Below, in pieces: positions 28,801 through 64,000 of a stretch of 64,000 bases of DNA. The translations under genes were made by a program, and so were the position numbers. The notes beneath the pieces are model-generated. The model made no database searches. It was given only the letters and a program-made list of their open reading frames with translations, and was not told the DNA's origin. The DNA is from Ranitomeya imitator (Eukaryota), in contig NC_091288.1 in the NCBI RefSeq assembly GCF_032444005.1, forward strand, positions 217,434,001-217,498,000, given 5' to 3'. Each line of letters begins with the position of its first letter. The first letter of the stretch is position 1.

Positions 28801-29526
28801 CACTCCCGTCTCCAAGACTTTACACGTGCTGCGCCGATTCTTTGGAATGCACTACCTAGGATAATACGATTAATCCCCAATCCCCACAGTTTTAAGCGTG
28901 CCCTAAAAACTCATTTGTTCAGACTGGCCTACCGCCTCAATGCATTAACCTAACGATCCCTGTGTGGCCTATATTAAAAAAAAAAAAAATTAATTAACTG
29001 GTTCATGCAGCTTTACACGAACACCCAAGCCTTACACTATGGCTGGTCCGAATAACTATAGCAATTGTTACCATCCACCTCTCGTGTCTCCCCTTTTCCT
29101 CATAGTTTGTAGCTTGCGAGCAGGGCCCTCACTCCTCTTGGTATCTGTTTTGAACTGTATTTCTGTTATGCTGTAATGTCTATTGTCTGTACAAGTCCCC
29201 TCTATAATTTGTAAAGCGCTGCGGAATATGTTGGCGCTATATAAATAAAAATTATTATTATTATTATTATTATTAACCTGCGGTGTCATAGCTGTTTACC
29301 TGCATACCATCATAAATATTCTTGAACTCTTAACCTGTTGTCTCTCGGCCTCTTTTCTGACCCATGATACTGATCTCCACTGCACTGAGCACTAAATTTA
29401 TAACAAAATGACTGACAGGCCTCGGGGCAGCCTGGGGCTCTTCTCTGGGTCACTGGGACCCAATATGGATCTGGCTCAGGTTTGGGGCTACCAAGTCATA
29501 CGAACCCTCAGTATCCCGGTCTAACA
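25818..29526 (+). mobile_element. Candidate solo LTR (~720 bp net) split by the second LINE
   Basis: TGTTA at 25818 and TAACA ending at 29526; TATATAA near 25977; flanks CCCC vs CCTC give only an imperfect TSD. Confidence 0.35.
26294..29273 (+). mobile_element. Second L2-clade LINE, 5'-truncated inside the endonuclease, RT intact
   Basis: TSD TAACCT (26288-26293, 29274-29279); (ATT)n tail from 29251; open frame to 28953 with [24 protein letters not shown] subfamily distinct from the first LINE. Confidence 0.95.
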
Positions 29527-40800: not shown

Positions 40801-42545
40801 GTGTATCTAATCCTACCCTGTGTGATACTGACTGTTGAGCTGTGTATCTAATCCTCTCCTGTGTGATACTATCTGCTGAGCCGTGTATCTAATCCTCTCC
40901 TGTGTGATACTGACTGTTGAGCTGTGTATCTAATCCTCTCCTGTGTGATACTGACTGCTGAGCCGTGTATCTAATCCTACCCTGTGTGATACTGACTGTT
41001 GAGCCGTGTATCTAATCCTCTCCTGTGTGATACTGACTGCTGAGCCGTGTATCTAATCCTACCCTGTGTGATACTGACTGCTGAGCCGTGTATCTAATCC
41101 TCTCCTGTGTGATACTGTCTGCTGAGCCGTGTATCTAATCCTACCCTGTGTGATACTGACTGCTGAGCTGTGTATCTAATCCTCTCCTGTGTGATACTGA
41201 CTGCTGAGCTGTGTATCTAATCCTATCCTGTGTGATACTGACTGCTGAGCTGTGTATCTAATCCTCTCCTGTGTGATACTGCCTGCTGAGCCGTGTATCT
41301 AATCCTATCCTGTGTGATACTGACTGCTGAGCCGTGTATCTAATCCTATCCTGTGTGATACTGACTGCTGAGCTGTGTATCTAATCCTCTCCTGTGTGAT
41401 ACTGTCTGCTGAGCCGTGTATCTAATCCTACCCTGTGTGATACTGACTGCTGAGCCGTGTATCTAATCCTCTCCTGTGTGATACTGTCTGCTGAGCCGTG
41501 TATCTAATCCTCTCCTGTGTGATACTGACTGCTGAGCTGTGTATCTAATCCTCTCCTGTGTGATACTGACTGCTGAGCCGTGTATCTAATCCTCTCCTGT
41601 GTGATACTGTCTGCTGAGCTGTGTATCTAATCCTCTCCTGTGTGATACTGACTGCTGGGCTGTGTATCTAATCCTCTCCTGTGTGATACTGCCTGCTGAG
41701 CCGTGTATCTAATCCTCTCCTGTGTGATACTGTCTGCTGAGCCGTGTATCTAATCCTCTCCTGTGTGATACTGACTGCTGAGCTGTGTATCTAATCCTCT
41801 CCTGTGTGATACTGACTGCTGGGCTGTGTATCTAATCCTCTCCTGTGTGATACTGCCTGCTGAGCCGTGTATCTAATCCTCTCCTGTGTGATACTGTCTG
41901 CTGAGCCGTGTATCTAATCCTCTCCTGTGTGATACTGTCTGCTGAGCCGTGTATCTAATCCTCTCCTGTGTGATACTGACTGCTGAGCCGTGTATCTAAT
42001 CCTATCCTGTGTGATACTGACTGCTGAGCTGTGTATCTAATCCTCTCCTGTGTGATACTGACTGCTGAGCTGTGTATCTAATCCTCTCCTGTGTGATACT
42101 GACTGCTGAGCCGTGTATCTAATCCTCTCCTGTGTGATACTGTCTGCTGAGCCGTGTATCTAATCCTATCCTGTGTGATACTGTCTGCTGAGCCGTGTAT
42201 CTAATCCTATCCTGTGTGATACTGACTGCTGAGCCGTATATCTAATCCTATCCTGTGTGATACTGACTGCTGAGCCGTGTATCTAATCCTCTCCTGTGTG
42301 ATACTGACTGCTGAGCCGTGTATCTAATCCTCTCCTGTGTGATACTGACTGCTGAGCCGTGTATCTAATCCTCTCCTGTGTGATACTGACTGCTGAGCCG
42401 TGTATCTATTCCTCTCCTGTGTGATACTGACTGCTGAGCCGTGTATCTAATCCTCTCCTGTGTGATACTGACTGCTGAGCCGTGTATCTAATCCTCTCCT
42501 GTGTGATACTGACTGCTGAGCCGTGTATCTAATCCTATATTGTGT
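34824..42545. repeat. 41-bp satellite family A, ~7.7 kb, ~188 copies
   Basis: Same unit as 15991-17108; internal 492-bp (12-unit) duplication, e.g. the CCTACCCT variant at 37823 and 38315. Confidence 0.99.
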
Positions 42546-42654
42546 GATACCGTCTCGGTAACCCCTCAGCACTACTCCCCCCATCATCTCATCTCTGACT
42601 GTGACAAATTTATAATCCTCATATGACTATAAAATTAATAAAGTCTGTACCCTT

Positions 42655-42937
42655 AACAAAGATGGCGGATACGGAACTTCCACTTTTTCCGGAAGTGCCT
42701 CTCCGGAGTCAGCATTTCGGAACTCTATGATTTCTCTTATCTAATTTTGACACGTTGCACGTCAGGCCACGTCACCAGGCCGGAGCATTCTGGGAAATGT
42801 AGTGTTCTTGAGTGACGTCATCCTTTGATTTAACTGAGGATCCGTACGTACGCGGACTACAAGTCCCGGCTCCACGTTGTCTCTGGAGTAGTAATTGAAG
42901 CCGGCTCTGTAGTAGAGCGAGGCGCGGATACGTGAAC
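42655..42937 (+). promoter_or_regulatory. CpG-rich housekeeping-type promoter of the EHD/dynamin-like gene
   Basis: YY1-type AAGATGGCGG (42659-42668), ETS/GABP CCGGAAGTG (42689-42697), ZNF143/THAP11 SBS GCATTCTGGGAAATGTAGT (42785-42803), CRE TGACGTCA (42813-42820), second ACTACAAGTCCC (42856-42867). Confidence 0.8.
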
Positions 42938-45900
42938 ATGTCCGGGAAAGTGAAGGTTCGGGCCGCTGCTAATGCGGAGGCGATGGCCGGGACCGTGTCC
43001 GTTAATGAGCGGATCCTGAGAGACTGCCACAACCTGTACACGGACGCTGAGAACGGTGAGAACCGGCAGCGTGTGTCTGTATATACAGTGTGTGTGTGTC
43101 CGCTCCTGTGCCCCGGCACGGTGTGTGTGTGTCCGCTCCTGTGCCCCTGCACGGTGTGTGTGTGTCCGCTCCTGTGCCCCTGCACGGTGTGTGTGTGTCC
43201 GCTCCTGTGCCCCTGCACGGTGTGTGTGTGTCCGCTCCTGTGCCCCGGCACGGTGTGTGTGTCCGCTCCTGTGCCCCTGCACGGTGTGTGTGTGTGTCCG
43301 CTCCTGTGCCCCTGCACGGTGTGTGTGTGTCCGCTCCTGTGCCCCCTGCACGGTGTGTGTGTGTCCGCTCCTGTGCCCCTGCACGGTGTGTGTGTGTCCG
43401 CTCCTGTGCCCCTGCACGGTGTGTGTGTGTCCGCTCCTGTGCCCCTGCACGGTGTGTGTGTGTCCGCTCCTGTGCCCCTGCACGGTGTGTGTGTGTCCGC
43501 TCCTGTGCCCCTGCACGGTGTGTGTGTGTCCGCTCCTGTGCCCCTGCACGGTGTGTGTGTGTCCGCTCCTGTGCCCCTGCACGGTGTGTGTGTGTCCGCT
43601 CCTGTGCCCCTGCACGGTGTGTGTGTGTCCGCTCCTGTGCCCCTGCACGGTGTGTGTGTGTCCGCTCCTGTGCCCCTGCACGGTGTGTGTGTGTCCGCTC
43701 CTGTGCCCCTGCACGGTGTGTGTGTGTCCGCTCCTGTGCCCCGGCACTGTGTGTGTGTGTGTCCGCTCCTGTGCCCCGGCACTGTGTGTGTGTCCGCTCC
43801 TGTGCCCCGGCACTGTGTGTGTGTCCGCTCCTGTGCCCCTGCACGGTGTGTGTGTCCGCTCCTGTGCCCCGGCACTGTGTGTGTGTCCGCTCCTGTGCCC
43901 CGGCACTGTGTGTGTGTGTGTCCGCTCCTGTGCCCCGACACTGTGTGTGTGTGTGTCCGCTCCTGTGCCCCTGCACTGTGTGTGTGTGTGTCCGCTCCTG
44001 TGCCCCTGCACGGTGTGTGTGTGTGTCCGCTCCTGTGCCCCGGCACGGTGTGTGTGTGTGTCCGCTCCTGTGCCCCTGCACGGTGTGTATGTGTGTCCGC
44101 TCCTGTGCCCCGGCACTGTGTGTGTGTGTGTCCGCTCCTGGGCACCTGTGCGCCCTGGATTATTGTATTGTGCTAGATGCCCCCGGTAGCTGGCCTGTGT
44201 CTTGGCTACGTGCACACGGTCAGTACACGTTGCGGGTTGGACTTGTGTACAGTATAGTGGCTGTCTTCAAGAAATCCCATCTCCACTGAGTGCACCGACG
44301 CCGACAGCTCACCCGCGGAGACAGACATGTGGTGCGTCTCTCCAGACTGCAGCATATCTATCTTGTGGAAGCGCTCGGTCTCTGTAAGGCTACGTTCACA
44401 TTCGCGTCTTTGGACGTGAAACGCACGCAAAAACGCATTGTTTTGTGACACATGCGTCCATTTTTGGCTTGATTTTGGACGCAAAAAAAATGCAACTTGC
44501 TGCGTCCTCTGCGCCTTGACGCTTGCGCCAAAAAAGACGCATGCATCACAAAACGCAAGACAACGCATGTCCATGCGCCCCCATGTTAAATTTAGGGGCG
44601 CATGACGCATGTGTCGCCGTGGCTGCGCCCGACGCAGCCCCGCAAACCGCTAATGTGAACGTAGCCTATGATCTCACCGTACAATGTATCAGACGCGGTG
44701 ATTCCGCACAGTTCAGTGATCACAAAGGATTCACCTGCGTCCAATAGCCGGCAGCGGACATGTGCTGCGTCCAAAGTGCTGCCGATTCCTGACCGTGTGC
44801 TCGGACCCTAACACTGTGGCCCCTCCTGGCTGGGTCCTGGCCCCCAGTATACAGTCCCGTCCCCCCGTGTGTGCACATTTCACCGCTCGTCTCCTCTCTG
44901 CAGGTCTCATTGCTCTCGCCTCGCACCTCGGCCTCACGTTCCTCCCCCCGAGGAAGAAGATCACCGTGATGTTAATGGGAAATCACTCGGCCGGGAAGAG
45001 CAGCTTCATCAACTGGTGAGGGTGGTCCGGGGTGTGGTGGTCCCGGTGGGGTGCTCTGCTGCTCGGGGGTTGCCCCTGGGTCTGTTAACGGTGGTGGTGG
45101 GGGGGTTCCGCTCCTGGTGGGGTGCGTTGCTGCTAGTGAGGGGGTGCGCTGCAGCTACCCGGGGGAGGCGAGTATGAGCGTGGACTGGTGCGTCCTGCGG
45201 AGGGTCCGGCGTTAACCGCTCCCCCCGCTTGTGACCAGGACGTGTGACACATATTCGGGGGAGTATAATGACCCCCAACATCTGTACCCTTCCCCCACAA
45301 CTGCTTATTCTTTCATGTGCGTTTCCAACTCCTGATTTGGTCCCGGCAGATTATTGGGCCCCGGCCCCTCATGGTGTCTCCGTCCTCCGCAGGTACATAG
45401 AGGAGCACATACAGCGGACCGGCGTCGCCATAGAAACACAAGGATTTGCCTTCATAACGAGCGGCCGCAAGAGGGAGTCACTGACGGTGAGCAGAGGGCG
45501 GCGGGGATCGGACATTCTCCAGGGACGGGGGTCAGATTGTCAGCGTCGGGGCGGCTCCCACCGCTCTCACTCCTGTCTCTGATCTTTCACAGGGCGACGC
45601 CACCCTCCACCTGTACCCGCACTTCAAGCCCCTGCAGTCCTTCCAGGGTAAGGAACCACCGCTGATGAGGAGGGCACCTGACCGGTGTCTGCCACCGCTG
45701 ATGAGTAGGGTGCCTTCTCACCGACTGGTGTCTGCCGCCACTGATGAGGAGAGCGCCTTCTCACCGACTGGTGTCTGCCACCACTGATGAGGAGGGCGCC
45801 TTCTCACCGACTGGTGTCTGCCACCACTGATGAGGAGGGCACCTTCTCACCGACTGGTGTCTGCCACCACTGATGAGGAGGGCGCCTTCTCACCGACCGG

Positions 45901-48900
45901 TGTCTGCCACCACTGATGAGGAGGGCGCCCGCTCACCGACCGGTGTCTGCCATCGCTGAGGAGGAGGGCGCCCATTCACCGACCGGTATCTGCCACCGCT
46001 GATGAGGAGGGCGCCCACTCACCGACCGGTGTCTGCCACCGCTGATGAGGAGGGCGCCCACTCACCGACCGGTGTCTGCCACCGCTGATGAGGAGGGCGC
46101 CCACTCACCGACCGGTGTCTGCCACCACTGATGAGGAGGGCGCCTTCTCACCGACCGGTGTCTGCCATCGCAGATGAGGAGGGCGCCTGACCGGTATCTG
46201 CCATCGCTGATGAGGAGGGCGCCTTCTCACCGACCGGTGTCTGCCACCACTGATGAGGAGGGCGCCTTCTCACCGACCGGTGTCTGCCATCGCTGAGGAG
46301 GAGGGCGCCCACTCACCGACCGGTATCTGCCACCGCTGATGAGGAGGGCGCCCACTCACCGACCGGTGTCTGCCACCGCTGATGAGGAGGGCGCCCACTC
46401 ACCGACCGGTATCTGCCACCACTGATGAGGAGGGCGCCTTCTCACCAACCGGTGTCTGCCACCACTGATGAGGGCGCCTTCTCACCGACCGGTGTCTGCC
46501 ACCACTGATGAGGAGGGCGCCTTCTCACCGACCGGTGTCTGCCACCACTGATGAGGAGGGCGCCTTCTCACCGACCGGTGTCTGCCACCACTGATGAGGA
46601 GGGCGCCCGCTCACCGACCGGTTAAGTAAATAAGGCAGCACACTGTAGCGCTGAAACATGCAAATATGAAACACGAAAATTGAACTGCATTACTGCACTA
46701 GAAATATGAAAAATGAGAGCGTTTAGCGCATAAAAATGGCCAATTTTATGTGTACCTGGTAGCCCCTTTACGGCATCTCTCTTATACCAGGTCCTACACT
46801 TGCCTTACCTCGCTGAGCAGGTCCAATACCCCTCCACAGAGAGAGAGAATTTTAGTCTAGGAAGAGGTTTCACATGCACCCATTCAGATGGAGACGTTTA
46901 TTCTCAGCGAGGTAAGGCAAGCGTAGGACCTGGTATAAGAGAGATGCCGTAAAGGGGCTACCAGGTACACATAAAATTGGCCATTTTTATGCGCTAAACG
47001 CTCTCATTTTTCATATTTCTAGTGCAGTAATGCAGTTCAATTTTCGTGTTTCATATTTGCATGTTTCAGCGCTACAGTGTGCTGCCTTATTTACTTAACT
47101 ATATACGAGTTGGCGACTCTGGGTTCAGCACCTGTTCACACTTAGTCTGTTTGGATGTGCCGGTCAGGTTTTTGAAATGTTCGCTCACCGACCGGTGTCT
47201 GCCACCACTGATGAGTAGGGCTCCCCCTGACCGGTGTCTGCCATCACTGATGAGGGCACCTGACCGGTGTCTGCCACCGCTGATGAGGGCGTCTGACCGG
47301 TGTCTGCCATCGCAGATGAGGAGGGCGCCTGCTCACCGACTGGTGTCTGCCATCGCAGATGAGGAGGGCGCCCCCTGACCGGTGTCTGCCACTGCTGATG
47401 AGGAGGGCGCCCCCTGACCGGTGTCTGCCACCGCTGATGAGGAGGGCGCCCCCTGACCGGTGTCTGCCACTGCTGATGAGGAGGGCGTCTGACCGGTGTC
47501 TGCCACTGCTGATGAGGAGGGCGCCCCCTGGTGTCCTCTGCTCGGCCTCTCCTGACTCGTGCCCCCTCTCCCGCAGGCGTGTCTGAATACCTGTGCACGG
47601 AGATCTCCACCTCGCGGCAGAAGAAGTTCAGCCTGGTGACGTTCGTGGACACCCCGGGGCTGGTGGACGGGGACATGAAATACCCCTTTGATGTGAACAG
47701 AGCCCTCTTGTGGCTGGGTGAGTGTACTGCTGTAGTAGAGCCGGTTATGGGGTGCAGCGGACCAGATTGCTGCATTTTAATCTGGTGTCCAACTGTATGG
47801 AAATTCTGCTAATCCGGGATGGGATGAGAAGTGAGGGTCTGACACTCGGACCCCCATTGACCATTTAGAGAGCGCGGGACGAGCGGGGAATCTCTGTAGC
47901 AGATTATCAGTGGGAGGCGACAGTCCGATAATCCGGCCCGTGTCTCTCAGGGGAGCTCTGCGACCTGGTGCTGGTCTTCTTCGACCCCATGGGGCAGGCG
48001 CTGTGTAAGCGCACCCTGGACATCGTGGAGAAGATCAACGAGAGCCACGGGGACAAACTGCACTTCTACCTGAGCAAAGCGGACGAGGCCGGAGGGGAGA
48101 GCGACCGGCAGGTGAGCGCCAGTGCTGCTCTAGTCGCCTCCAAAGCTGCGGCTGTTGTTGCTTTCTGGACACTACTTTTCTCGCAGGAGGCTGAATTACG
48201 ATCGCAGCTCTGGATGTGACCCGTGTCTTTCCTTGCAGAGAGTCCTGATGCAGATTGTCCAGGAGTTGTGCAAGCGGCCGGGGCTGAACAAGTGCGGCTT
48301 CGACATGCCGACCATCTACATCCCGAACCCCAATAAGGTGAGACCCCCGGACTGACGGCAGGAGGCGCTGCTGCCCCCTGGTGTCCGCTGACAGTTATAC
48401 TGACTCGTTCCAGCCGAGTCGCTGCGTCAATCAGATCGAGGACGTGTGTAAGACCATCGAGAAGACCATCACCCAGACCGTGCAGACCACCCTCAACGCC
48501 CTGGGCAGAGACTGCCAGAAACTGAGCGAGGGCATCGAGAGCAAACTGCGGGAGGACGAGTGAGCGCCGGTCACAGGGGTGGGGGGTCTCGGCTAGTCCG
48601 GAGCGTGTGTGTGACCCTCTCCTCCCACCGCAGTGACACCGTGTGGAGGAACAGACGGGCCCGGCTGCGCGGCTGCCTCTTCGGGCTGACGGGATTCCTG
48701 CTCCCGCTCTTCCTCTTCGCCTCCATCTTGTTCGGGGTCCTCCCCCGCCAGCTGTGGCTGAGTCTCCTGGGGCTGTCCGGAGTGGAGACGCTGGAGCTCT
48801 ACCTGGTGAGGATGGGGGGAGTAGTCCTTACTATGGGGTCGTCTCATCAGAAGAACTTACCGCCGCTGCTGTTCTTTCCCGCCGCAGTCTCCGCTGCACA

Positions 48901-49298
48901 CGCTGTGGTCCATGGTCCCGGAGGACTACGTGCTCTACACCTTCCTCGGGCTGCTGCTCCTCACCCTGCTCTTCCTGCTCCTGGCGCAGAGATGTTTCAG
49001 GTACCCGGCGCCCCCTCCTGGCCGTTCTCCCGAGCGAGCGCCCCCCCGTCGTCTGACCCGCACTCTTCTCTTTCCTTCCCAGAACCCAGGAGACTCTGAG
49101 CAAGAAACAACGCCGCTACTTGCTGGACCGCCGCGCCTACGTCACCGAGGTGGTGGAGCACAAGCGGGTAAGAGCGACTGTCTGCAGCGCTGCACATGGT
49201 GCCGCCCGTCGGCTGCTTCTCACCGTTATCTCTCCCATCAGAAGCGGCTGTACGAGGATTACCTGAAGCAGAGCGTGGGCGAACACGACATGAGCTGA
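42938..49298 (+). CDS. Uncharacterised EHD/dynamin-superfamily P-loop NTPase with two C-terminal transmembrane segments, 450 aa
   Basis: 12 exons: 42938-43055, 44904-45015, 45393-45486, 45593-45647, 47577-47717, 47951-48111, 48239-48337, 48414-48559, 48634-48805, 48888-49000, 49083-49167, 49242-49298 (1353 nt, all GT-AG, phases consistent, no internal stop). G1 GNHSAGKS, G3 DTPG, G4-like SKAD; hydrophobic segments CLFGLTGFLLPLFLFASILFGVL and YVLYTFLGLLLLTLLFLLLA. Confidence 0.88.
43086..44140. repeat. ~33-bp GT-rich minisatellite, ~32 copies, in intron 1 of the NTPase gene
   Basis: Unit CGG(TG)nTCCGCTCCTGTGCCCCTGCA with variable (TG)n; starts ~30 bp after the exon 1 donor. Confidence 0.97.
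44388..44666. mobile_element. MITE, PIF/Harbinger (Tourist)-like, 279 bp
   Basis: 15-bp TIR GGCTACGTTCACATT / AATGTGAACGTAGCC; flanks TAA and TAT (TWA-type TSD with one mismatch); internal palindromic structure. Confidence 0.75.
45655..47530. repeat. 43-bp GC-rich minisatellite (36-39-bp variants to the right), interrupted at 46622-47181
   Basis: Unit CTCACCGACCGGTGTCTGCCACCACTGATGAGGAGGGCGCCTT; lies in intron 4 of the NTPase gene. Confidence 0.95.
46622..47181. mobile_element. 560-bp insertion with 197-bp inverted arms; possibly Penelope-like
   Basis: Arms 46621-46817 and 46903-47099 are reverse complements with one mismatch; 85-bp spacer; 14-bp TSD CGCTCACCGACCGG (46608-46621, 47182-47195). 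The family assignment is inference only. Confidence 0.7.
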
Positions 49299-49519
49299 GG
49301 GCGGCCGTCACCCACAGGGACCCCCACACTACACGGTGCCACCCTGCCCACCGGCACGACGGTACCGTCCGCGGGACGTCACCACCAGCAATAACTACGG
49401 AGCGCCGCTCCTGCCCCCCAATTATGCAAGAACAGACTGCCCGAATCATGGCGTCCTATAGGGACGAGACACTGCCAAACTGTGCCAAGCAATGTGGTGC
49501 AGATGTAGCAGAGCTGTGC

Positions 49520-50215
49520 TGTTACGTAGGACTGCAGAGCACATCTACATTATCTGTGTTGTTACATAGGACTGCAGAGCACATCTACATTATCTGCTGT
49601 TACGTAGGACTGCAGATCACATCTACATTATCTGTGTTGTTACGTAGGACTGCAGATCCCATCTACATTATCTGTGCTGTTACGTAGGACTGCAGAGCAC
49701 ATCTACATTATCTGTGCTGTAACGTAGGACTGCCGAGCACATCTACATTATCTGTGCTGTTACGTAGGACTGCAGAGCACATCTACATTATCTGTGCTGT
49801 TACGTAGGACGGCCGAGCACATCTACATTATCTGTGTTGTTACGTAGGACTGCAGAGCACATCTACATTATCTGTGTTGTTACATAGGACTGCAGATCCC
49901 ATCTACATTATCTGTGCTGTTACGTAGGACTGCAGAGCACATCTACATTATCTGTGTTGTTACGTAGGACTGCAGAGCACATCTACATTATCTGTGGTGT
50001 TACATAGGACTGCAGAGCACATCTACATTATCTGTGTTGTTACGTAGGACTGCAGAGCACATCTACATTATCTGTGTTGTTACATAGGACTGCAGAGCAC
50101 ATCTACATTATCTGTGTTGTTACGTAGGACTGCAGAGCACATCTACATTATCTGTGTTGTTACATAGGACTGCAGAGCACATCTACATTATCTGTGCTGT
50201 TACGTAGGACTGCAG
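49520..50215. repeat. 40-bp tandem repeat, ~17 copies, in the predicted 3' UTR of the NTPase gene
   Basis: Unit GTTACGTAGGACTGCAGAGCACATCTACATTATCTGTG(C/T)T; lies between the stop (49298) and AATAAA (50452). Confidence 0.96.
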
Positions 50216-50364
50216 GCACCACCTGCTCCATCATCTCTTCCCCGTGCGCTGCAGTGACACATTCGGCTCTGCTACATCTGTGCCTAGTACACTCCAGTAT
50301 AGATTTAGACTCTCGTCGCTGGTTCCCTTTTTTTATCGGGCATTCCTGATCCCGCCAGTATTGC

Positions 50365-50878: not shown

Positions 50879-53800
50879 GGGCAGTATTATAGCAGTTATA
50901 TTCCTGTACATAGGGGCAGTATTATAGCAGTTATATTCTTGTACATAGGGGCAGTATTATAGCAGTTATATTCCTGTACATAGGGGCAGTATTATAGCAG
51001 TTATATTCTTGTACATAGGGGCAGTATTATAGCAGTTATATTCCTGTACATAGGGGCAGTATTATAGTAGTTATATTCTTGTACATAGGGGCAGTATTAT
51101 AGGAGTTATATTCTTGTACATAGGAGCAGTATTATAGCAGTTATATTCTTGTACATAGGGGCAGTATTATAGCAGTTATATTCCTGTACATAGGGGCAGT
51201 ATTATAGGAGTTATATTCTTGTACATAGGGGCAGTATTATAGGAGTTATATTCTTGTACATAGGGGCAGTATTATAGTAGTTATATTCTTGTACATAGGG
51301 GCAGTATTATAGCAGTTATATTCCTGTACATAGGGGCAGTATTATAGGAGTTATATTCTTGTACATAGGGGCAGTATTATAGGAGTTCTATTCCTGTACA
51401 TAGGGGCAGTATTATAGCAGTTATATTCTTGTACATAGGGGCAGTATTATAGGGGTTCTATTCCTGTACATAGGGGCAGTATTATAGGAGTTATATTCTT
51501 GTACATAGGAGCAGTATTATAGGAGTTATATTCTTATACATAGGAGCAGTATTATAGGAGTTATATTCTTGTATATAGGGGCAGTATTATAGTAGTTATA
51601 TTCTTGTACATAGGAGCAGTATTATAGTAGTTATATTCTTGTACATAGGAGCAGTATTATAGTAGTTATATTCTTGTACATAGGAGCAGTATTATAGTAG
51701 TTATATTCTTGTACATAGGAGCAGTATTACAGCAGTTATATTCTTGTACATAGGGGCAGTATTACAGCAGTTATATTCTTGTACATAGGGGCAGTATTAC
51801 AGCAGTTATATTCTTGTACATAGGGGCAGTATTATAGTAGTTATATTCTTGTACATAGGAGCAGTATTATAGTAGTTATATTCTTGTACATAGGAGCAGT
51901 ATTATAGTAGTTATATTCTTGTACATAGGGGCAGTATTATAGGAGTTATATTCTTGTACATAGGAGCAGTATTATAGGAGTTATATTCCTGTACATAGGG
52001 GCAGTATTATAGTAGTTTTATTCTTGTACATAGGGGCAGTATTATAGTAGTTATATTCTTGTATATAGGGGCAGTATTATAGCAGTTATATTCCTGTACA
52101 TAGGGGCAGTATTATAGTAGTTTTATTCTTGTACATAGGGGCAGTATTATAGTAGTTATATTCTTGTACATAGGAGCAGTATTATAGTAGTTATATTCTA
52201 GTACATAGGGGCAGTATTATAGTAGTTATATTCTTGTACATAGGGGCAGTATTATAGTAGTTATATTCTTGTACATAGGGGCAGTATTATAGCAGTTATA
52301 TTCTTGTACATAGGGGCAGTATTATAGCAGTTATATTCCTGTACATAGGGGCAGTATTATAGGAGTTATATTCCTGTACATAGGAGCAGTATTATAGTAG
52401 TTATATTCTTGTACATAGGGGCAGTATTATAGCAGTTATATTCTTGTATATAGGGGCAGTATTATAGCAGTTATATTCCTGTACATAGGGGCAGTATTAT
52501 AGGAGTTATATTCCTGTACATAGGATCAGTATTATAGTAGTTATATTCTTGTACATAGGGGCAGTATTATAGTAGTTATATTCTTGTATATAGGAGCAGT
52601 ATTATAGTAGTTATATTCTTGTACATAGGGGCAGTATTATAGGAGTTATATTCTTGTATATAGGAGCAGTATTATAGTAGTTATATTCTAGTACATAGGG
52701 GCAGTATTATAGTAGTTATATTCTTGTACATAGGGGCAGTATTATAGGAGTTATATTCTTGTATATAGGAGCAGTATTATAGTAGTTATATTCTTGTACA
52801 TAGGGGCAGTATTATAGGAGTTATATTCTTGTATATAGGAGCAGTATTATAGTAGTTATATTCTTGTACATAGGGGCAGAGTTATAGGAGTTATATTCTT
52901 GTACATAGGGGCAGTATTATAGTAGTTATATTCTTGTACATAGGGGCAGAATTATAGTAGTTATATTCTTGTATATAGGGGCAGTATTATAGCAGTTATA
53001 TTCTTGTACATAGGAGCAGTATTATAGTAGATATATTCTTGTACATAGAGGCAGTATTATAGTAGTTATATTCTTGTACATAGGAGCAATATTATAGTAG
53101 TTATATTCTTGTACATAGGGGGCAGTATTATAGTAGTTATAGTCTTGTACATAGGGGCAGTATTATAGTAGTTATATTCTTGCACATAGGGGCAGTATTA
53201 TAGTAGTTATATTCTTGTACATAGGGGCAGAGTTATAGGAGTTATATTCTTGTACATAGGGGCAGTATTATAGTAGTTATATTCTTGTACATAGGGGCAG
53301 AATTATAGTAGTTATATTCTTGTATATAGGGGCAGTATTATAGCAGTTATATTCTTGTACATAGGAGCAGTATTATAGTAGATATATTCTTGTACATAGA
53401 GGCAGTATTATAGTAGTTATATTCTTGTACATAGGAGCAATATTATAGTAGTTATATTCTTGTACATAGGGGGCAGTATTATAGTAGTTATAGTCTTGTA
53501 CATAGGGGCAGTATTATAGTAGTTATATTCTTGCACATAGGGGCAGTATTATAGTAGTTATATTCTTGTACATAGGGGCAGAGTTATAGGAGTTATATTC
53601 TTGTACATAGGGGCAGAGTTATAGGAGTTATATTCTTGTACATAGGGGCAGTATTATAGTAGTTATATTCTTGTACATAGGGGCAGAATTATAGTAGTTA
53701 TATTCTTGTATATAGGGGCAGTATTATAGTAGTTATATTCTTGTACATAGGAGCAGTATTATAGTAGTTATATTCTTGTACATAGGAGCAGTATTATAGT

Positions 53801-56077
53801 AGTTATATTCTTGTACATAGGGGCAGAGTTATAGGAGTTATATTCTTGTACATAGGGGCAGTATTATAGTAGTTATATTCTTGTACATAGGGGCAGAATT
53901 ATAGTAGTTATATTCTTGTATATAGGGGCAGTATTATAGCAGTTATATTCTTGTACATAGGAGCAGTATTATAGTAGATATATTCTTGTACATAGAGGCA
54001 GTATTATAGTAGTTATATTCTTGTACATAGGAGCAATATTATAGTAGTTATATTCTTGTACATAGGGGGCAGTATTATAGTAGTTATAGTCTTGTACATA
54101 GGGGCAGTATTATAGTAGTTATATTCTTGCACATAGGGGCAGTATTATAGTAGTTATATTCTTGCACATAGGAGCAGTATTATAGTAGTTATATTCTTGT
54201 ACATAGGAGCAGTATTATAGTAGTTATATTCTTGTACCTAGCAGTATTATAGTAGTTATATTCTTGTACATAGGGGCAGAATTATAGGAGTTATATTCTT
54301 GTACATAGGGGCAGTATATTAGTAGTTATATTCCTGTACATAGGGGCAGTATTATAGTAGTTATATTCTTGTATATATGGAGCAGTATTATAGGAGTTAT
54401 ATTCTTGTACATAAGGGCAGTATTATAGTAGATATATTCTTGTACATAGAAGCAGTATTATAGCAGATATATTCTTGTACATAGAAGCAGTATTATAGCA
54501 GTTATATTCTTGTATATAGGGGCAGTATTATAGTAGTTCTATTCTTGTACATAGGGGCAGTATTATAGTAGTTCTATTCTTGTACATAGGGGCAGTATTA
54601 TAGTAGTTCTATTCTTGTACATAGGGGCAGTATTATAGTAGTTCTATTCTTGTACATAGGGGCAGTATTATAGTAGTTCTATTCTTGTACATAGGGGCAG
54701 TATTATAGTAGTTCTATTCTTGTACATAGGGGCAGTATTATAGTAGTTCTATTCTTGTACATAGGGGCAGTATTATAGCAGTTATATTCTTGTACATAGG
54801 GGCAGTATTATAGCAGTTATATTCTTGTACATAGGAGCAGTATTATAGCAGTTATATTCTTGTACATAGGGGCAGTATTATAGTAGTTATATTCTTGTAC
54901 ATAGGGAGCAGTATTATAGTAGCTATGTTCTTGTACATAGGAGCAGTATTATAGTAGTTATATTCTTGTACATAGGAGCAGTATTATAGTAGTTATATTC
55001 TTGTACATAGGGGCAGTATTATAGTAGTTATATTCTTGTACATAGGGGCAGTATTATAGCAGTTATATTCCTGTACATAGGGGCAGTATTATAGGAGTTA
55101 TATTCCTGTACATAGGATCAGTATTATAGTAGTTATATTCTTGTACATAGGGGCAGAATTATAGGAGTTATATTCTTGTACATAGGGGCAGTATATTAGT
55201 AGTTATATTCCTGTACATAGGGGCAGTATTATAGTAGTTATATTCTTGTATATATGGAGCAGTATTATAGGAGTTATATTCTTGTACATAGGGGCAGTAT
55301 TATAGTAGATATATTCTTGTACATAGAAGCAGTATTATAGTGGTTATATTCTTGTATATAGGGGCAGTATTATAGTAGTTCTATTCTTGTACATAGGGGC
55401 AGTATTATAGTAGTTCTATTCTTGTACATAGGGGCAGTATTATAGTAGTTCTATTCTTGTACATAGGGGCAGTATTATAGCAGTTATATTCTTGTACATA
55501 GGGGCAGTATTATAGCAGTTATATTCTTGTACATAGGAGCAGTATTATAGCAGTTATATTCTTGTATATAGGGAGCAGTATTATAGTAGCTATATTCTTG
55601 TACATAGGAGCAGTATTATAGTAGTTATATTCTTGTACATAGGAGCAGTATTATAGTAGTTATATTCTTGTACATAGGAGAAGTATTATAGTAGGTATAT
55701 TCTTGTACATAGGGGCAGTATTATAGTAGTTATATTCTTGTACATAGGAGCAGTATTATAGTAGTTATATTCTTGTACATAGGAGCAGTATTATAGTAGG
55801 TATATTCTTGTACATAGGAGCAGTATTATATTAGTTATATTCTTGTACATAGGAGCAGTATTATAGTAGTTATATTCTTGTATATAGGAGCAGTATTATA
55901 GTAGTTCTATTCTTGTAAATAGGGGCAGTATTATAGTAGTTATATTCTTGTACATAGGAGCAGTATTACAGCAGTTATATTCTTGTACATAGGGGCAGTA
56001 TTATAGCAGTTATATTCCTGTACATAGGGGGCAGTATTATAGCACTGATATTCTCTTATATAGGAGGCAGTATTATT
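50879..56077. repeat. 35-bp AT-rich satellite, ~5.2 kb, ~148 copies, filling nupr1 intron 2
   Basis: Unit GCAGTATTATAGTAGTTATATTCTTGTACATAGG(G/A); a block of variants recurs near 53030, 53380 and 53975. Confidence 0.99.
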
Positions 56078-56868: not shown

Positions 56869-59800
56869 CTGCAGAGCATCTCACCTGAGGAATCACACCC
56901 CGTACTGCCCTGCAGAGCATCTCACCTGAGGAATCACACCCCGTACTGCCCTGCAGAGCATCTCACCTGAGGAATCACACCCCGTACTGCCCTGCAGAGC
57001 ATCTCACCTGAGGAATCACGCCCTGTACTGCCCTGCAGAGCGTCTCACCTGAAAAATCACACCCCGTACTGCCCTGCAGAGCATCTCACCTGAGGAATCA
57101 CACCCCGTACTGCCCTGCAGAGCGTCTCACCTGAGGAATCACGCCCTGTACTGCCCTGCAGAGCGTCTCACCTGAGGAATCACGCCCTGTACTGCCCTGC
57201 AGAGCGTCTCACCTGAAAAATCACACCCCGTACTGCCCTGCAGAGCGTCTCACCTGAGGAATCACACCCCGTACTGCCCTGCAGAGCGTCTCACCTGGGG
57301 AATCACACCCCGTACTGCCCTGCAGAGCATCTCACCTGAGGAATCACACCCCATACTGCCCTGCAGAGCGTCTCACCTGAGGAATCACACCCCGTACTGC
57401 CCTGCAGAGCGTCTCACCTGAGGAATCACGCCCTGTACTGCCCTGCAGAGCGTCTCACCTGAAAAATCACACCCCGTACTGCCCTGCAGAGCATCTCACC
57501 TGAGGAATCACACCCCGTACTGCCCTGCAGAGCATCTCACCTGGGGAATCACACCCTGTACTGCCCTGCAGAGCGTCTCACCTGAAAAATCACACCCCGT
57601 ACTGCCCTGCAGAGCGTCTCACCTGAGGAATCACACCCCGTACTGCCCTGCAGAGCGTCTCACCTGGGGAATCACACCCCGTACTGCCCTGCAGAGCATC
57701 TCACCTGAGGAATCACACCCCATACTGCCCTGCAGAGCGTCTCACCTGAGGAATCACACCCCGTACTGCCCTGCAGAGCGTCTCACCTGAGGAATCACGC
57801 CCTGTACTGCCCTGCAGAGCGTCTCACCTGAAAAATCACACCCCGTACTGCCCTGCAGAGCGTCTCACCTGAGGAATCACACCCCGTACTGCCCTGCAGA
57901 GCATCTCACCTGGGGAATCACACCCTGTACTGCCCTGCAGAGCGTCTCACCTGAAAAATCACACCCCGTACTGCCCTGCAGAGCGTCTCACCTGAGGAAT
58001 CACACCCCGTACTGCCCTGCAGAGCGTCTCACCTGAAAAATCACACCCCGTACTGCCCTGCAGAGCGTCTCACCTGAGGAATCACATCCCGTACTGCCCT
58101 GCAGAGCGTCTCACCTGAGGAAACACATCCCGTACTGCCCTGCAGAGCATCTCACCTGAGGAATCACATCCCGTACTGCCCTGCAGAGCGTCTCACCTGA
58201 AAAATCACACCCCGTACTGCCCTGCAGAGCGTCTCACCTGAGGAATCACACCCCGTACTGCCCTGCAGAGCATCTCACCTGGGGAATCACACCCTGTACT
58301 GCCCTGCAGAGCGTCTCACCTGAAAAATCACACCCCGTACTGCCCTGCAGAGCGTCTCACCTGAGGAATCACACCCCGTACTGCCCTGCAGAGCGTCTCA
58401 CCTGGGGAATCACACCCCGTACTGCCCTGCAGAGCATCTCACCTGAGGAATCACACCCCATACTGCCCTGCAGAGCGTCTCACCTGAGGAATCACACCCC
58501 GTACTGCCCTGCAGAGCGTCTCACCTGAGGAATCACGCCCTGTACTGCCCTGCAGAGCGTCTCACCTGAAAAATCACACCCCGTACTGCCCTGCAGAGCG
58601 TCTCACCTGAGGAATCACACCCCGTACTGCCCTGCAGAGCATCTCACCTGGGGAATCACACCCTGTACTGCCCTGCAGAGCGTCTCACCTGAAAAATCAC
58701 ACCCCGTACTGCCCTGCAGAGCGTCTCACCTGAGGAATCACACCCCGTACTGCCCTGCAGAGCGTCTCACCTGAAAAATCACACCCCGTACTGCCCTGCA
58801 GAGCGTCTCACCTGAGGAATCACATCCCGTACTGCCCTGCAGAGCGTCTCACCTGAGGAAACACATCCCGTACTGCCCTGCAGAGCATCTCACCTGAGGA
58901 ATCACATCCCGTACTGCCCTGCAGAGCGTCTCACCTGAAAAATCACACCCCGTACTGCCCTGCAGAGCGTCTCACCTGAGGAATCACATCCCGTACTGCC
59001 CTGCAGAGCGTCTCACCTGAGGAATCACATCCCGTACTGCCCTGCAGAGCGTCTCACCTGAGGAATCACATCCCGTACTGCCCTGCAGAGCGTCTCACCT
59101 GAGGAATCACACCCTGTACTGCCATGCAGAGCGTCTCACCTGAGGAATCACCCCGTACTGCCATGCAGAGCGTCTCACCTGAGGAATCACACCCCGTACT
59201 GCCCTGCAGAGCATCTCACCTGGGGAATCACACCCCGTACTGCCCTGCAGAGCGTCTCACCTGGGGAATCACACCCCGTACTGCCCTGCAGAGCGTCTCA
59301 CCTTGGGAATCACACCCCGTACTGCCCTGCAGAGCGTCTCACCTGGGGAATCACACCCCGTACTGCCCTGCAGAGCGTCTCATCTGGGGAATCACACCCC
59401 GTACTGCCCTGCAGAGCGACTCACCTGAGGAATCACACCCCGTACTGCGCTGCAGAGCGTCTCACCTGAGGAATCACACCTCGTACTGCCCTGCAGAGCG
59501 TCTCACCTGAAAAATCACACCCCGTACTGCCCTGCAGAGCGTCTCACCTGAGGAATCACATCCCGTACTGCCCTGCAGAGTGTCTCACCTGAGGAATCAC
59601 ACCCTGTACTGCCCTGCAGAGCGTCTCACCTGAGGAATCACACCCTGTACTGCTCTGCAGAGCGTCTCACCTGGGGAATCACACCCCGTACTGCCCTGCA
59701 GAGCGACTCACCTGAGGAATCACACCCCGTACTGCCCTGCAGAGCGTCTCACCTGAGGAATCACACCCCGTACTGCCCTGCAGAGCGTCTCACCTGAGGA

Positions 59801-62800: not shown

Positions 62801-64000
62801 GTACTGCCCTGCAGAGCGTCTCACCTGAGGAATCACACCCCGTACTGCCCTGCAGAGCGTCTCACCTGAAAAATCACACCCCGTACTGCCCTGCAGAGCG
62901 TCTCACCTGAGGAATCACATCCCGTACTGCCCTGCAGAGCGTCTCACCTGAGGAATCACATCCCGTACTGCCCTGCAGAGCGTCTCACCTGAGGAATCAC
63001 ATCCCGTACTGCCCTGCAGAGCGTCTCACCTGAGGAATCACACCCTGTACTGCCCTGCAGAGCGTCTCACCTGAGGAATCACCCCGTACTGCCATGCAGA
63101 GCGTCTCACCTGAGGAATCACACCCCGTACTGCCCTGCAGAGCGTCTCACCTGAGGAATCACACCCCCGTACTGCCCTGCAGAGCATCTCACCTGAGGAA
63201 TCACACCCCTTACTGCTCTGCAGAGCATCTCACCTGGGGAATCACACCCTGTACTGCCCTGCAGAGCATCTCACCTGAGGAATCACACCCTGTACTGCCC
63301 TGCAGAGCGTCTCACCTGAGGAATCACCCCGTACTGCCCTGCAGAGCGTCTCACCTGAGGAATCACACCCTGTACTGCCCTGCAGAGCATCTCACCTGAG
63401 GAATCACACCCTGTACTGCCCTGCAGAGCGTCTCACCTGAGGAATCACACCCTATACTGCCCTGCAGAGCGTCTCACCTGAGGAATCACCCCGTACTGCC
63501 ATGCAGAGCGTCTCACCTGAGGAATCACCCCGTACTGCCATGCAGAGCATCTCACCTGAGGAATCACCCTGTACTGCCCTGCAGAGCATCTCACCTGGGG
63601 AATCACAACCCGTACTGCCATGCAGAGCGTCTCACCTGAGGAATCACACCCTGCATTGCCTTGCAGAGCGTCTCACCTGGGGAATCACACCCTGTACTGC
63701 CCTGCAGAGCGTCTCACCTGGGGAATCACACCCCATACTGCCCTGCAGAGCGTCTCACCTGAGGAATCACCCCGTACTGCCATGCAGAGCATCTCACCTG
63801 AGGAATCACCCTGTACTGCCCTGCAGAGAGTCTCACCTGAGGAATCACCCCGTACTGCCATGCAGAGCGTCTCACCTGAGGAATCACCCTGTACTGCCCT
63901 GCAGAGGGTCTCACCTGAGGAATCACCCCGTACTGCCCTGCAGAGCATCTCACCTGGGGAATCACACCCCATACTGTCCTGCAGAGCGTCTCACCTGAGG
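56869..64000. repeat. 41-bp satellite family B, >7.1 kb, >170 copies, runs off the right edge
   Basis: Unit GCAGAGCGTCTCACCTGAGGAATCACACCCCGTACTGCCCT; unrelated in sequence to family A; higher-order duplications at ~738 bp and ~2.87 kb. Confidence 0.99.

What the first reader, a model, noticed from the sequence alone, without database searches (positions are those of the whole stretch)
42938..49298. Membrane-anchored EHD/dynamin-like NTPase with mitofusin/atlastin-like topology: candidate undescribed membrane-remodelling protein
Seen: a G domain that parallels EHD proteins (GNHSAGKSSFINW; GVAIETQGF; FVDTPGLVDG..KYPFD....WLGELCDLVLVFFDP; YLSKAD), then a predicted helical stalk (NQIEDVCKTIEKTITQTVQTTLNALGRDCQKLSEGIESKLRED), a basic patch RNRRARLR, two long hydrophobic segments ~35 aa apart, and a basic helical tail. 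There is no EH domain and no signal peptide. Established: EHDs are soluble ATPases with an EH domain; sarcalumenin is luminal; the pattern G domain-stalk-TM pair-tail is that of the fusogens atlastin/Sey1 and mitofusin. Inference: both termini are cytosolic and the protein may tether, fuse or tubulate an organelle membrane. I do not recognise a named mammalian ortholog; that impression needs a database search.
Basis: partly seen in the sequence, partly recalled or inferred. Interest (0 to 1): 0.78.

Follow-up and report, generated by a model that had tools for sequence, protein, structure and literature searches.

The report
Membrane-anchored EHD-like NTPase, uncharacterised family
This frog gene is real and expressed, and it encodes a membrane-anchored relative of the EHD membrane-shaping ATPases; its family runs from protists to fish and frogs, was not seen in any amniote, and I found no study of its function.

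Summary
Window 42938-49298 (+) holds a 12-exon, all GT-AG gene for a 450-aa protein. It is 98.4% identical to NCBI 'uncharacterized protein LOC143785277' of Ranitomeya variabilis and orthologous to zebrafish si:ch211-11k18.4.

- **Expression:** mRNA-like contigs in four public runs carry every splice joint of exons 5-12, including both transmembrane (TM) exons.
- **Fold:** an AlphaFold2 model (pLDDT 89) superposes on EHD4 (Z 26.8, 3.5 Å over 319 residues). This covers the N-terminal helices, the G domain and the helical domain.
- **Membrane anchor:** there is no EH domain. One long helix runs from the G domain into TM1. A second hydrophobic helix and a basic tail helix follow, and the flanking charges put both termini in the cytosol.
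- **Catalytic motifs:** the G1-G4 motifs are intact in 75 family members. The methionine that makes EHDs ATP-specific is absent.
- **Distribution:** hagfish to frogs, many invertebrates, choanoflagellates, amoebozoans, oomycetes, Hemimastix and a malawimonad. I saw no amniote, Drosophila or nematode member.
- **Bacterial kin:** proteins of about 450 aa share the P-loop signature and have a TM hairpin at the same place. They link this family to EHDs.

The only literature trace of the gene is one microarray table row. The likely function is a nucleotide-driven membrane shaper or tether; this is inferred, not tested.

The parts
42938..43055 (+). Exon 1 (aa 1-40): start codon and the first N-terminal helix, which in the model joins the helical domain.
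   Evidence: GT donor at 43056. The stop-free ORF trick found full-length orthologs through these residues. AF2 predicts a helix at residues 22-35.
44904..45015 (+). Exon 2 (aa 40-77): second N-terminal helix and the P-loop GNHSAGKS (44978-45001).
   Evidence: AG/GT borders. The P-loop is conserved in 72-74 of 75 family members.
45393..45486 (+). Exon 3 (aa 77-108): switch I region with T92.
   Evidence: Borders. Position 92 is T or S in 75 of 75 members. It aligns to the EHD2 switch I threonines.
45593..45647 (+). Exon 4 (aa 109-127).
   Evidence: Borders. Its 3' end is the loose end of spliced contigs in 4 runs (table 7).
47577..47717 (+). Exon 5 (aa 127-174): G3 motif DTPG (47648-47659) and switch II.
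   Evidence: Borders. Spliced contigs cover it. D151, P153 and G154 are each present in 74 of 75 members.
47951..48111 (+). Exon 6 (aa 174-227): G4 motif SKAD (48073-48084).
   Evidence: Joint 47716/47950 is seen in 4 runs. The motif [ST]KxD is conserved: K in 73 and D in 74 of 75 members.
48239..48337 (+). Exon 7 (aa 228-260): end of the G domain.
   Evidence: Joints seen. It is nearly invariant among vertebrates.
48414..48559 (+). Exon 8 (aa 261-309): start of the long stalk helix, the counterpart of EHD helix alpha8.
   Evidence: AF2 predicts one helix over residues 268-343 at pLDDT above 90. The A2 profile aligns through this region to the bacterial kin.
48634..48805 (+). Exon 9 (aa 309-366): basic patch (48647-48670), TM1 (about 48668-48748) and the first part of the loop.
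   Evidence: Hydropathy. The exon is present in spliced contigs of 4 runs. Net charge is positive before TM1 and -2 in the loop.
48888..49000 (+). Exon 10 (aa 367-404): end of the loop and TM2 (about 48921-49000).
   Evidence: Hydropathy peak of 2.6. AF2 predicts a helix at residues 378-402. The exon is present in the spliced contigs.
49083..49167 (+). Exon 11 (aa 404-432): basic tail helix.
   Evidence: AF2 predicts a helix at residues 411-443. Joints seen.
49242..49298 (+). Exon 12 (aa 433-450 plus stop): conserved C-terminal motif around L435, Y436, Y439, L440, Q442 and S443.
   Evidence: These columns are invariant among 14 vertebrates. Joint 49166/49241 is seen in 4 runs.

Best explanation
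**What it is.** An intact, expressed gene for an integral-membrane NTPase of the EHD branch of the dynamin superfamily. The cytosolic N-terminal part has the EHD core: two N-terminal helices, a large G domain, and a helical domain. The EH domain is missing.

**What differs from EHDs.** EHDs dip a polybasic, hydrophobic tip (the alpha8-alpha9 loop) into one membrane leaflet. This protein has instead a basic patch followed by a hairpin of two hydrophobic helices. A basic tail helix then runs back along the stalk. Both termini face the cytosol.

**How it most likely works (inferred).**
- Nucleotide binding lets the G domains pair across the nucleotide pocket and build oligomers on the membrane that holds the hairpin.
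- The hairpin acts as a permanent wedge.
- Hydrolysis resets the assembly.
- The outcome is shaping, stabilising or tethering of a curved organelle membrane.

**Nucleotide.** GTP is at least as likely as ATP.

**Shown:** the gene model, its expression, the fold, the motifs, the topology signals and the phyletic spread.
**Inferred:** enzymatic activity, oligomerisation, the membrane action and the organelle.
For: **Gene and expression**
- Gene model and splicing.

**Likeness to EHD**
- Sequence: EHD2 at 6e-11 with the single protein, and at 5e-18 with a 75-member profile. Every other PDB family is at 5e-5 or weaker.
- Structure: the AF2 model has pLDDT 89.4 and pTM 0.81. Against EHD4 (5mvf) it gives Z 26.8, rmsd 3.5 Å over 319 residues, spanning model 21-442 and chain 19-403. 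Foldseek ranks EHD4 and EHD2 first.

**Catalytic motifs**
- GNHSAGKS, T92, DxPG and [ST]KxD are kept in 72-75 of 75 members sharing 27-83% identity.
- Two C-terminal hydrophobic segments are present in most members.

**Topology**
- Net charge is positive before TM1 and after TM2, and negative in the loop.

**Bacterial link**
- 248 bacterial loci encode proteins of about 450 aa with the same P-loop signature and a 45-50 aa hydrophobic hairpin about 260 aa after the P-loop.
- The bacterial profile matches EHD2 and EHD4 at 1e-60, up to EHD2 residue 324-331. The hairpin starts there. By my own recollection of EHD2 residue numbers (not checked here), that is the membrane-inserting tip.
- The family profile aligns to the bacterial proteins from the N-terminal helices into TM1, at 115-158 bits.

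**Literature**
- The tip of the EHD helical domain is its membrane-binding site. Its alpha8-alpha9 loop inserts into the outer leaflet (PMC9741607).

**Selection**
- Frog against shark or fish is 67-75% identical at a constant length of about 450 aa.
Against: - There is no biochemical, localisation or genetic datum for any member. The only paper found is a microarray table row.
- The tryptophan of EHD helix alpha6 is kept in the bacterial kin (consensus YGALCWNL) but aligns to Q235 in this family. By my own recollection (not checked here), that tryptophan sits in the EHD-specific dimer interface. The EHD mode of stable dimerisation may therefore not apply.
- The loop of about 30 aa between the hydrophobic helices differs from the tight bacterial hairpin. 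It could instead lie in the membrane plane.
- AF2 gives a single state and no membrane.
- The organelle is unknown.
- I could not place sarcalumenin in the comparison.
Confidence: 0.6

Rival explanations
1. It is a homotypic tether and fusogen of the atlastin or mitofusin type. G domains on two opposed membranes pair in trans, and hydrolysis pulls the TM hairpins and tails together until the bilayers merge.
For: - The order of parts is the same: cytosolic G domain, helical region, two TM helices, then a cytosolic amphipathic or basic tail.
- Minimal MFN1 and MFN2 structures are the second-best structural matches, at Z 18.5-20.
Against: - The fold and sequence are EHD-type. Described EHD activities are membrane tubulation and scission; I found no report of fusion (PMC9741607).
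- Atlastin is not among the top 50 structural matches.
- The MFN sequence match is not significant, at E about 0.08.
- There is no arginine finger and no RD-type G4 motif.
Confidence: 0.2
2. It is a membrane-bound regulatory NTPase that does not reshape membranes. It could act as a switch or scaffold for a channel, pump or import machine. Sarcalumenin is linked to the Ca2+-store system (PMC7016017), and Toc34 works at the chloroplast translocon.
For: - The best human BLAST hit of the zebrafish ortholog was sarcalumenin, at 2e-05 (PMC3530609).
- Several orthologs are auto-named 'sarcalumenin-like'.
- Weak profile hits to Toc34 and septin P-loops.
- The EHD alpha6 tryptophan aligns to Q235 here.
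Against: - The whole EHD core is conserved, including the long helix that leads into the membrane.
- There is no signal peptide and no acidic luminal region of the sarcalumenin kind.
- The Toc34 and septin hits cover only the P-loop.
Confidence: 0.15
3. It is not a working gene: either a pseudogene or a mis-joined prediction.
For: - The locus is embedded in minisatellites and retroelements.
- The assembly carries H211, where most vertebrate orthologs have R.
Against: - The 450-codon frame is uninterrupted across 12 GT-AG exons.
- Spliced transcripts occur in 4 runs.
- Identity to fish and sharks is 67-75%.
- H occurs at position 211 in 12 of 75 family members.
Confidence: 0.01

Closest known systems
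EHD1-4 / RME-1 (Eps15-homology-domain ATPases, dynamin superfamily)
   Same: - Best sequence and structure match: E 5e-18; Z 26.8 with rmsd 3.5 Å over 319 residues.
- The helical domain is composite, built from helices before and after the G domain.
- The G1-G4 layout is the same.
- Membrane contact is at the end of the long central helix (PMC9741607).
   Different: - No linker and no EH domain.
- No hits to any EHD-specific Pfam model.
- An integral TM pair replaces the peripheral polybasic tip.
- G4 is [ST]KxD followed by E, T or Q, not NKxD followed by Met, so ATP specificity is not implied (PMC5084822).
- The alpha6 tryptophan kept in EHD and in the bacterial kin aligns to glutamine here.
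- Significant sequence similarity covers residues 58-241 only.
Bacterial EHD/sarcalumenin-like GTPases with a C-terminal TM pair (noted by Schaffer, Iyer, Burroughs and Aravind 2020, PMC7016017; no experimental study found)
   Same: - Length of about 450 aa.
- P-loop signature HS[AS]GKS[ST][FL][IV]N.
- N-terminal helices, G domain, and a long helix running into a hydrophobic hairpin about 255-260 aa after the P-loop, followed by a C-terminal tail.
- hhalign E 1e-44; 115-158 bits against the family profile.
   Different: - Only about 21-30% identity.
- The bacterial hairpin is tight (45-50 aa with no loop), whereas the eukaryotic family has a loop of about 30 aa.
- The bacterial proteins are much nearer to EHDs (209 bits) than this family is (68 bits).
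- In the tree the eukaryotic family lies on one side of a branch with 100% support.
Mitofusin / Fzo1 and atlastin / Sey1 (membrane-anchored fusion GTPases)
   Same: - Topology: cytosolic G domain, helical bundle, two TM helices, cytosolic tail.
- MFN1 and MFN2 are the second-best structural matches, at Z 18.5-20.
   Different: - No significant sequence match (MFN1 E about 0.08; atlastin absent).
- Half the size of mitofusin, with no HR1/HR2 bundles.
- No GBP-type arginine finger or RD motif as in atlastin.
Sarcalumenin (SRL)
   Same: - An EHD-related G domain without an EH domain.
- It was the best human BLAST hit of the zebrafish ortholog, at 2e-05 (PMC3530609).
   Different: - By my own knowledge (not tested here), SRL has a signal peptide and an acidic Ca2+-binding region and lies in the SR lumen.
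- This protein has no signal peptide, no acidic region, and a TM pair.
- A direct comparison was not possible because no SRL sequence was at hand.

Membership tests
Dynamin superfamily | Large G domain with G1 GxxxxGK[ST], a switch I Thr, G3 DxxG and G4 [NT]KxD-like motifs | tested here: met
   GNHSAGKS, T92, DTPG and SKAD are present and conserved in 72-75 of 75 members. Pfam Dynamin_N scores 34.1 bits against a cut-off of 27.
Dynamin superfamily | Helical bundle next to the G domain, built from helices N- and C-terminal to it, with the membrane site at its tip | tested here: met
   The AF2 model has helices at 22-47 and 268-443. It superposes on EHD4 over model 21-442. The feature is described in PMC5084822.
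Dynamin superfamily | Assembly-stimulated nucleotide hydrolysis | not testable with these tools
   Needs purified protein.
EHD family | EHD-type G domain plus helical domain fold | tested here: met
   Z 26.8, rmsd 3.5 Å over 319 aligned residues to EHD4 5mvf. Profile E 5e-18 to EHD2.
EHD family | C-terminal EH domain joined by a linker | tested here: not met
   The protein ends at residue 450 after the tail helix. Pfam shows no EH or EF-hand hit at E up to 1.
EHD family | Methionine directly after G4 that excludes guanine, giving ATP specificity (PMC5084822) | tested here: not met
   The residue after D218 is E (26), T (24), Q (7), D (4), S (4) or L (3) of 75; Met is not among these six commonest. 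The nucleotide preference itself cannot be tested here.
EHD family | Peripheral membrane binding through a polybasic, hydrophobic tip | tested here: not met
   A basic patch is kept (residues 314-321), but it is followed by two hydrophobic helices of 25-28 aa.
Sarcalumenin | Signal peptide and luminal acidic Ca2+-binding region before the G domain | tested here: not met
   There is no hydrophobic N-terminus and the G domain starts at about residue 58. Sequence closeness to SRL was not tested, because no SRL sequence was available.
Atlastin / Sey1 | GBP-type G domain (P-loop arginine finger, RD in G4) | tested here: not met
   The P-loop has Ser at that place and G4 is SKAD. Atlastin is absent from the top 50 structural matches and from the profile hits.
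Atlastin / Sey1 | Two TM helices followed by a cytosolic tail helix | tested here: met
   This is a likeness in topology only.
Mitofusin / Fzo | About 740-860 aa with HB1/HB2 (HR1, HR2) bundles, and a significant sequence match | tested here: not met
   The protein has 450 aa. MFN1 E is about 0.08, over the P-loop only. The structural Z of about 20 is below that of EHD.
Bacterial TM-pair EHD-like GTPases | About 450 aa, the HSAGKS-type P-loop signature, and a hydrophobic hairpin about 260 aa after the P-loop | tested here: met
   The eukaryotic proteins nevertheless form their own group, separated by a branch with 100% SH-aLRT support.

The most novel reading that the evidence does not exclude
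This is the vertebrate member of a very old eukaryotic branch of the EHD/sarcalumenin clade, possibly as old as the last eukaryotic common ancestor. On this reading:

- It keeps the bacterial design of an EHD core with a TM hairpin at the membrane-binding tip.
- It works as an integral-membrane, probably GTP-driven, shaper or tether of an organelle.
- It escaped study because it is absent from amniotes, and no Drosophila or nematode member appeared among the hits.
- EHDs would then be the derived form, having lost the hairpin and gained the EH domain.
Probability: 0.45. Interest if true: 0.8.

Novelty: new variant of a known kind. Interest (0 to 1): 0.65.

Why it matters
The dynamin superfamily is considered well mapped in animals. 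Here is a strongly conserved member with an architecture not described for eukaryotes: an EHD fold plus an integral TM pair. Frog against shark is about 68% identical, and frog against insect about 47%.

- **Tractable models.** The gene is present in zebrafish and Xenopus, so knockouts and tagging are straightforward.
- **A loss to explain.** It was seen in every non-amniote vertebrate class sampled but in no amniote. That raises the question of what process was lost or taken over.
- **A link for EHD origins.** It gives a living eukaryotic link between EHDs and their bacterial TM-hairpin relatives. This bears on how peripheral membrane wedges arose from integral ones.

Tried and rejected
- **Exon pieces alone.** Single exons searched against Pfam and the PDB gave nothing useful: a P-loop hit at E 0.03 only, and no EHD hit. 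Full-length relatives were reached by querying the stop-free ORF 42932-44173, scoring only its first 41 residues.
- **Single-sequence AlphaFold2.** The model was useless at pLDDT 46. The 75-sequence alignment gave pLDDT 89.
- **Tree with EHD and sarcalumenin.** It could not be built. No tool returned their sequences as ids, and I did not type sequences. Only profile scores are given.
- **Conserved bacterial gene neighbours.** None recurred beyond overlapping spurious ORFs.
- **Organism of unnamed family representatives.** The look-up of encoding contigs returned assembly accessions only.
- **Curated family models.** NCBIfam and Pfam hold no model specific to this family or to its C-terminal half.
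- **Literature.** Searches for 'sarcalumenin-like', 'EHD-like' with 'transmembrane', and dynamin-superfamily evolution found no description of this family. A 2026 EHD review does not mention it.
- **Supplement of PMC7016017.** It is not held.
- **Pseudogene reading.** Rejected.
Full report
**1. Observation**

The window is vertebrate DNA. The quoted peptides lie on the + strand, in separate short ORFs. Reading the DNA and joining the pieces by GT-AG rules gives 12 exons:

| Exon | Coordinates |
|---|---|
| 1 | 42938-43055 |
| 2 | 44904-45015 |
| 3 | 45393-45486 |
| 4 | 45593-45647 |
| 5 | 47577-47717 |
| 6 | 47951-48111 |
| 7 | 48239-48337 |
| 8 | 48414-48559 |
| 9 | 48634-48805 |
| 10 | 48888-49000 |
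| 11 | 49083-49167 |
| 12 | 49242-49298 |

Together they make 1353 nt and 450 codons plus a stop.

Spliced proteins cannot be handed to the tools by reference. I therefore queried the stop-free ORF 42932-44173, which reads from exon 1 into the intron-1 minisatellite, and scored only its first 41 residues. This returned 450-aa frog proteins. The best is NCBI 'uncharacterized protein LOC143785277 [Ranitomeya variabilis]'. My model differs from it at 7 of 450 residues. I used it (P0001) as the stand-in for the window's protein.

**2. Expression and splicing**

Public runs hold about the exonic share of the words of 47500-49400. I laid four runs from three studies on that stretch.
- They carry contigs of 1.1-1.7 kb that skip all seven introns between exons 5 and 12, exactly at the modelled GT..AG borders.
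- Their loose 5' end reads the end of exon 4.
- The TM exons (9 and 10) are in every spliced contig.

Contigs cannot exclude rare isoforms.

**3. What the protein is**

*Sequence.*
- Pfam gives only the generic Dynamin_N (34 bits, cut-off 27) and MMR_HSR1 models. Nothing matches residues 260-450, and there is no EH domain.
- Against all PDB sequences, the single protein hits EHD2 and EHD4 only (6e-11, residues 60-220).
- A profile of 75 family members raises this to 5e-18. The next families (Campylobacter DLP, Toc34, septin, dynamin, BDLP, mitofusin) score between 3e-4 and 0.1, over the P-loop only. Atlastin is absent.

*Structure.*
- AlphaFold2 with the 75-sequence alignment gives a confident model, with pLDDT 89.4 and pTM 0.81.
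- Its elements are helices at 22-35 and 41-47; a G domain at about 59-260; one unbroken helix at 268-343; helices at 347-374 and 378-402; and a tail helix at 411-443.
- Foldseek ranks EHD4 and EHD2 first (8e-15).
- VIA-align gives EHD4 (5mvf, the open 'active' form) Z 26.8 and rmsd 3.5 Å over 319 residues. This spans model 21-442 against chain 19-403.
- Closed EHD2 gives Z about 21, and minimal MFN1 and MFN2 give Z 18.5-20.

The whole EHD core is therefore present, not just the G domain.

**4. Membrane anchor**

- Hydropathy finds two segments, about 321-347 and 378-404.
- The first is the distal end of the long helix. The stalk therefore runs straight into the bilayer.
- The flanks are basic (R314-R321 before TM1; R and K after TM2). 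The 30-aa loop has net charge -2 and no K or R. By the positive-inside rule, both termini are cytosolic.
[quoted passage not shown] Its alpha8-alpha9 loop inserts into the outer leaflet (PMC9741607). The review PMC5084822 notes that atlastin, mitofusin and BDLP carry TM sequences at that same tip.
- Here the TM pair sits at the end of the alpha8-like helix.

**5. Catalytic motifs**

The 75 members share 27-83% identity with the frog protein. Conservation among them is:

| Position | Count of 75 |
|---|---|
| G65 | 74 |
| S68 | 74 |
| G70 | 72 |
| K71 | 73 |
| S72 | 73 |
| T or S at 92 | 75 |
| D151 | 74 |
| P153 | 74 |
| G154 | 74 |
| S or T at 215 | 72 |
| K216 | 73 |
| D218 | 74 |

- An active NTPase is therefore likely.
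- EHDs use ATP because a methionine right after G4 blocks the guanine amino group (PMC5084822). In this family that residue is E, T or Q, and G4 fits the [NT]KxD consensus. GTP is thus at least as plausible as ATP. This is inference.
- The tryptophan of EHD helix alpha6 is conserved in the bacterial kin ('YGALCWNL') and in EHD. It aligns to Q235 here.
- That this tryptophan lies in the EHD dimer interface is my own knowledge and was not checked here.

**6. Family and distribution**

*Vertebrates.*
- The word search with P0001 found 1170 proteins. The top 120 are all about 450 aa and come from frogs, a salamander, a caecilian, lungfish, coelacanth, bichir, paddlefish, gar, many teleosts (named after zebrafish si:ch211-11k18.4), sharks, rays and a chimaera.
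- Their identity to the frog protein is 67-98%.
- Alignment of 14 vertebrates shows near-invariance of residues 55-290. The TM sequences are less conserved but always hydrophobic.
- Hagfish, a second coelacanth locus and a second gar copy also appear.

*Other eukaryotes.*
- The exhaustive HMMER search found 1937 cluster representatives at E of 1e-3 or better, and 223 at 1e-30 or better.
- Named members include hemipterans, a springtail, Pigoraptor, Monosiga brevicollis, Clastostelium (Amoebozoa), Hemimastix, Gefionella (a malawimonad) and Aphanomyces (an oomycete).
- A search from the planthopper protein added orthopterans, a sawfly, a mayfly, a damselfly, crustaceans, chelicerates and a centipede.
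- It also added molluscs, a brachiopod, an annelid, nemerteans, bryozoans, amphioxus, a hemichordate and cnidarians. All are 445-460 aa and 45-53% identical to the planthopper query.

*What was not seen.*
- No amniote, Drosophila, mosquito or nematode entry appeared in any list.
- A 2012 paper lists human sarcalumenin (2e-05) as the best human hit of the zebrafish gene (PMC3530609).
- Absence from amniotes is thus well supported but not proven. The lists are capped at 120-150 rows.

*Family traits.* In 75 members, the P-loop 'GNHSAGKS' and two C-terminal hydrophobic segments are the rule.

**7. Bacterial kin and the link to EHD**

- A scan of one genome per prokaryotic species with the family's P-loop signature found 248 loci. 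They come from Rhodobacterales, Chromatiales, Planctomycetota, Verrucomicrobiota, Myxococcota and others, including isolates on megabase contigs.
- Their ORFs are mostly 440-490 aa, with a 45-50 aa hydrophobic stretch (a tight hairpin) about 260 aa after the P-loop.
- This fits the remark of Schaffer et al. 2020 (PMC7016017) that the closest bacterial homologs of EHD and sarcalumenin carry a TM pair after the GTPase.

Profile scores put the bacterial group in the middle:

| Comparison | Score |
|---|---|
| Bacterial profile vs EHD2/EHD4 | 209 bits, 1e-60 |
| This family's profile vs bacterial proteins | 115-158 bits, aligned from the N-terminal helices into TM1 |
| This family vs bacterial alignment (hhalign) | E 1e-44 |
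| This family's profile vs EHD2 | 68 bits |

- The bacteria-EHD alignment ends at EHD2 residue 324-331. The bacterial hairpin begins at that point. That this is the EHD2 membrane tip rests on my own recollection of its residue numbers.
- I built a quick maximum-likelihood tree of 33 eukaryotic and 45 bacterial proteins. It separates the two groups by a branch with 100% SH-aLRT support.
- Within the eukaryotes, animals form one group (99) with a choanoflagellate next to them. The other protists lie outside, as expected for vertical descent.
- The tree is unrooted and lacks EHD and SRL. The order of events therefore stays open.

**8. Mechanism**

*Shown:* an expressed, strongly constrained gene; an EHD core; intact nucleotide motifs; and a TM pair at the tip with cytosolic termini.

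*Inferred:*
- Nucleotide-dependent pairing and oligomerisation of the G domains on the membrane that carries the hairpin.
- The hairpin acting as a fixed wedge.
- Hydrolysis resetting the assembly.

The result would be shaping, stabilising or tethering of a curved organelle membrane. I put this at about 0.6. A true atlastin- or mitofusin-like fusion role gets about 0.2. A non-remodelling regulatory role gets about 0.15. The organelle is unknown.

**9. Novelty**

- The gene is catalogued but uncharacterised.
- The only literature trace is one microarray table row. A 2026 review of EHD research does not mention such a relative.
- No curated Pfam or NCBIfam model exists for the family.
- It fails EHD membership on the EH domain, the post-G4 methionine and peripheral binding. 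It fails membership of atlastin, mitofusin and sarcalumenin on their defining features.
- I class it as a new variant of a known kind: an EHD-fold dynamin-superfamily NTPase with an integral hairpin.

**10. Limits**

- EHD and SRL sequences could not be brought into a tree.
- The AF2 coordinates could not be inspected residue by residue.

Noticed in passing
window 42000-42550, 43088-44148, 45675-46622, 47190-47530, 49514-50219, 50879-56076, 56869-64000: The gene is flanked and interrupted by minisatellites. There are 41-bp units upstream, 33-bp x 32 in intron 1, and 43-bp x 22 plus 39-bp x 9 in intron 4. Just after the stop there are 40-bp x 18, then 35-bp x 148 (5.2 kb, AT-rich) and 41-bp x 175 (over 7 kb, running off the window). 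The intron-1 array is stop-free in three frames, which makes 350-450 aa pseudo-ORFs.
   Followed up: partly
window 48062 (codon 211, 48061-48063): The assembly reads CAC (His211), four residues before the G4 motif. Spliced contigs of 3 of 4 runs read CGC (Arg), which is the residue in P0001, the closest frog orthologs and most vertebrates. His occurs at this column in 12 of 75 family members, so it is probably a tolerated allele.
   Followed up: partly
window 47640 (codon 148): One run (X5) reads T for C, which would change the vertebrate-invariant Thr148 (in LVTFVD, just before DTPG) to Met. It rests on a single contig and was not pursued.
   Followed up: no
window 20697-23114 and 26245-28953 (+): Two long ORFs (805 and 902 aa) carry reverse-transcriptase domains (RVT_1, 1e-35 to 6e-37). 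They are retroelement copies upstream of the gene.
   Followed up: partly
Callorhinchus P0135, catfish P0121/P0123, coelacanth P0122, gar P0392: Some fishes have a second, faster-evolving copy. The Callorhinchus one is 42% identical to the frog protein and the catfish ones 57-58%. In the tree, the two that were included (Callorhinchus B and Silurus B) branch inside the vertebrate group. The Callorhinchus copy has an extra N-terminal hydrophobic segment and only one clear C-terminal one.
   Followed up: partly
loci L001-L080 (bacterial): The bacterial TM-hairpin proteins match EHD2 and EHD4 at 1e-60 and keep the EHD alpha6 motif 'YGAL.W'. No conserved operon partner was found within 3 kb. No NCBIfam model names them.
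   Followed up: partly
window 42760-42830: Just upstream of the start codon there is a palindromic TGACGTCA (CRE-like) site near 42812-42819. It was not tested against chance.
   Followed up: no
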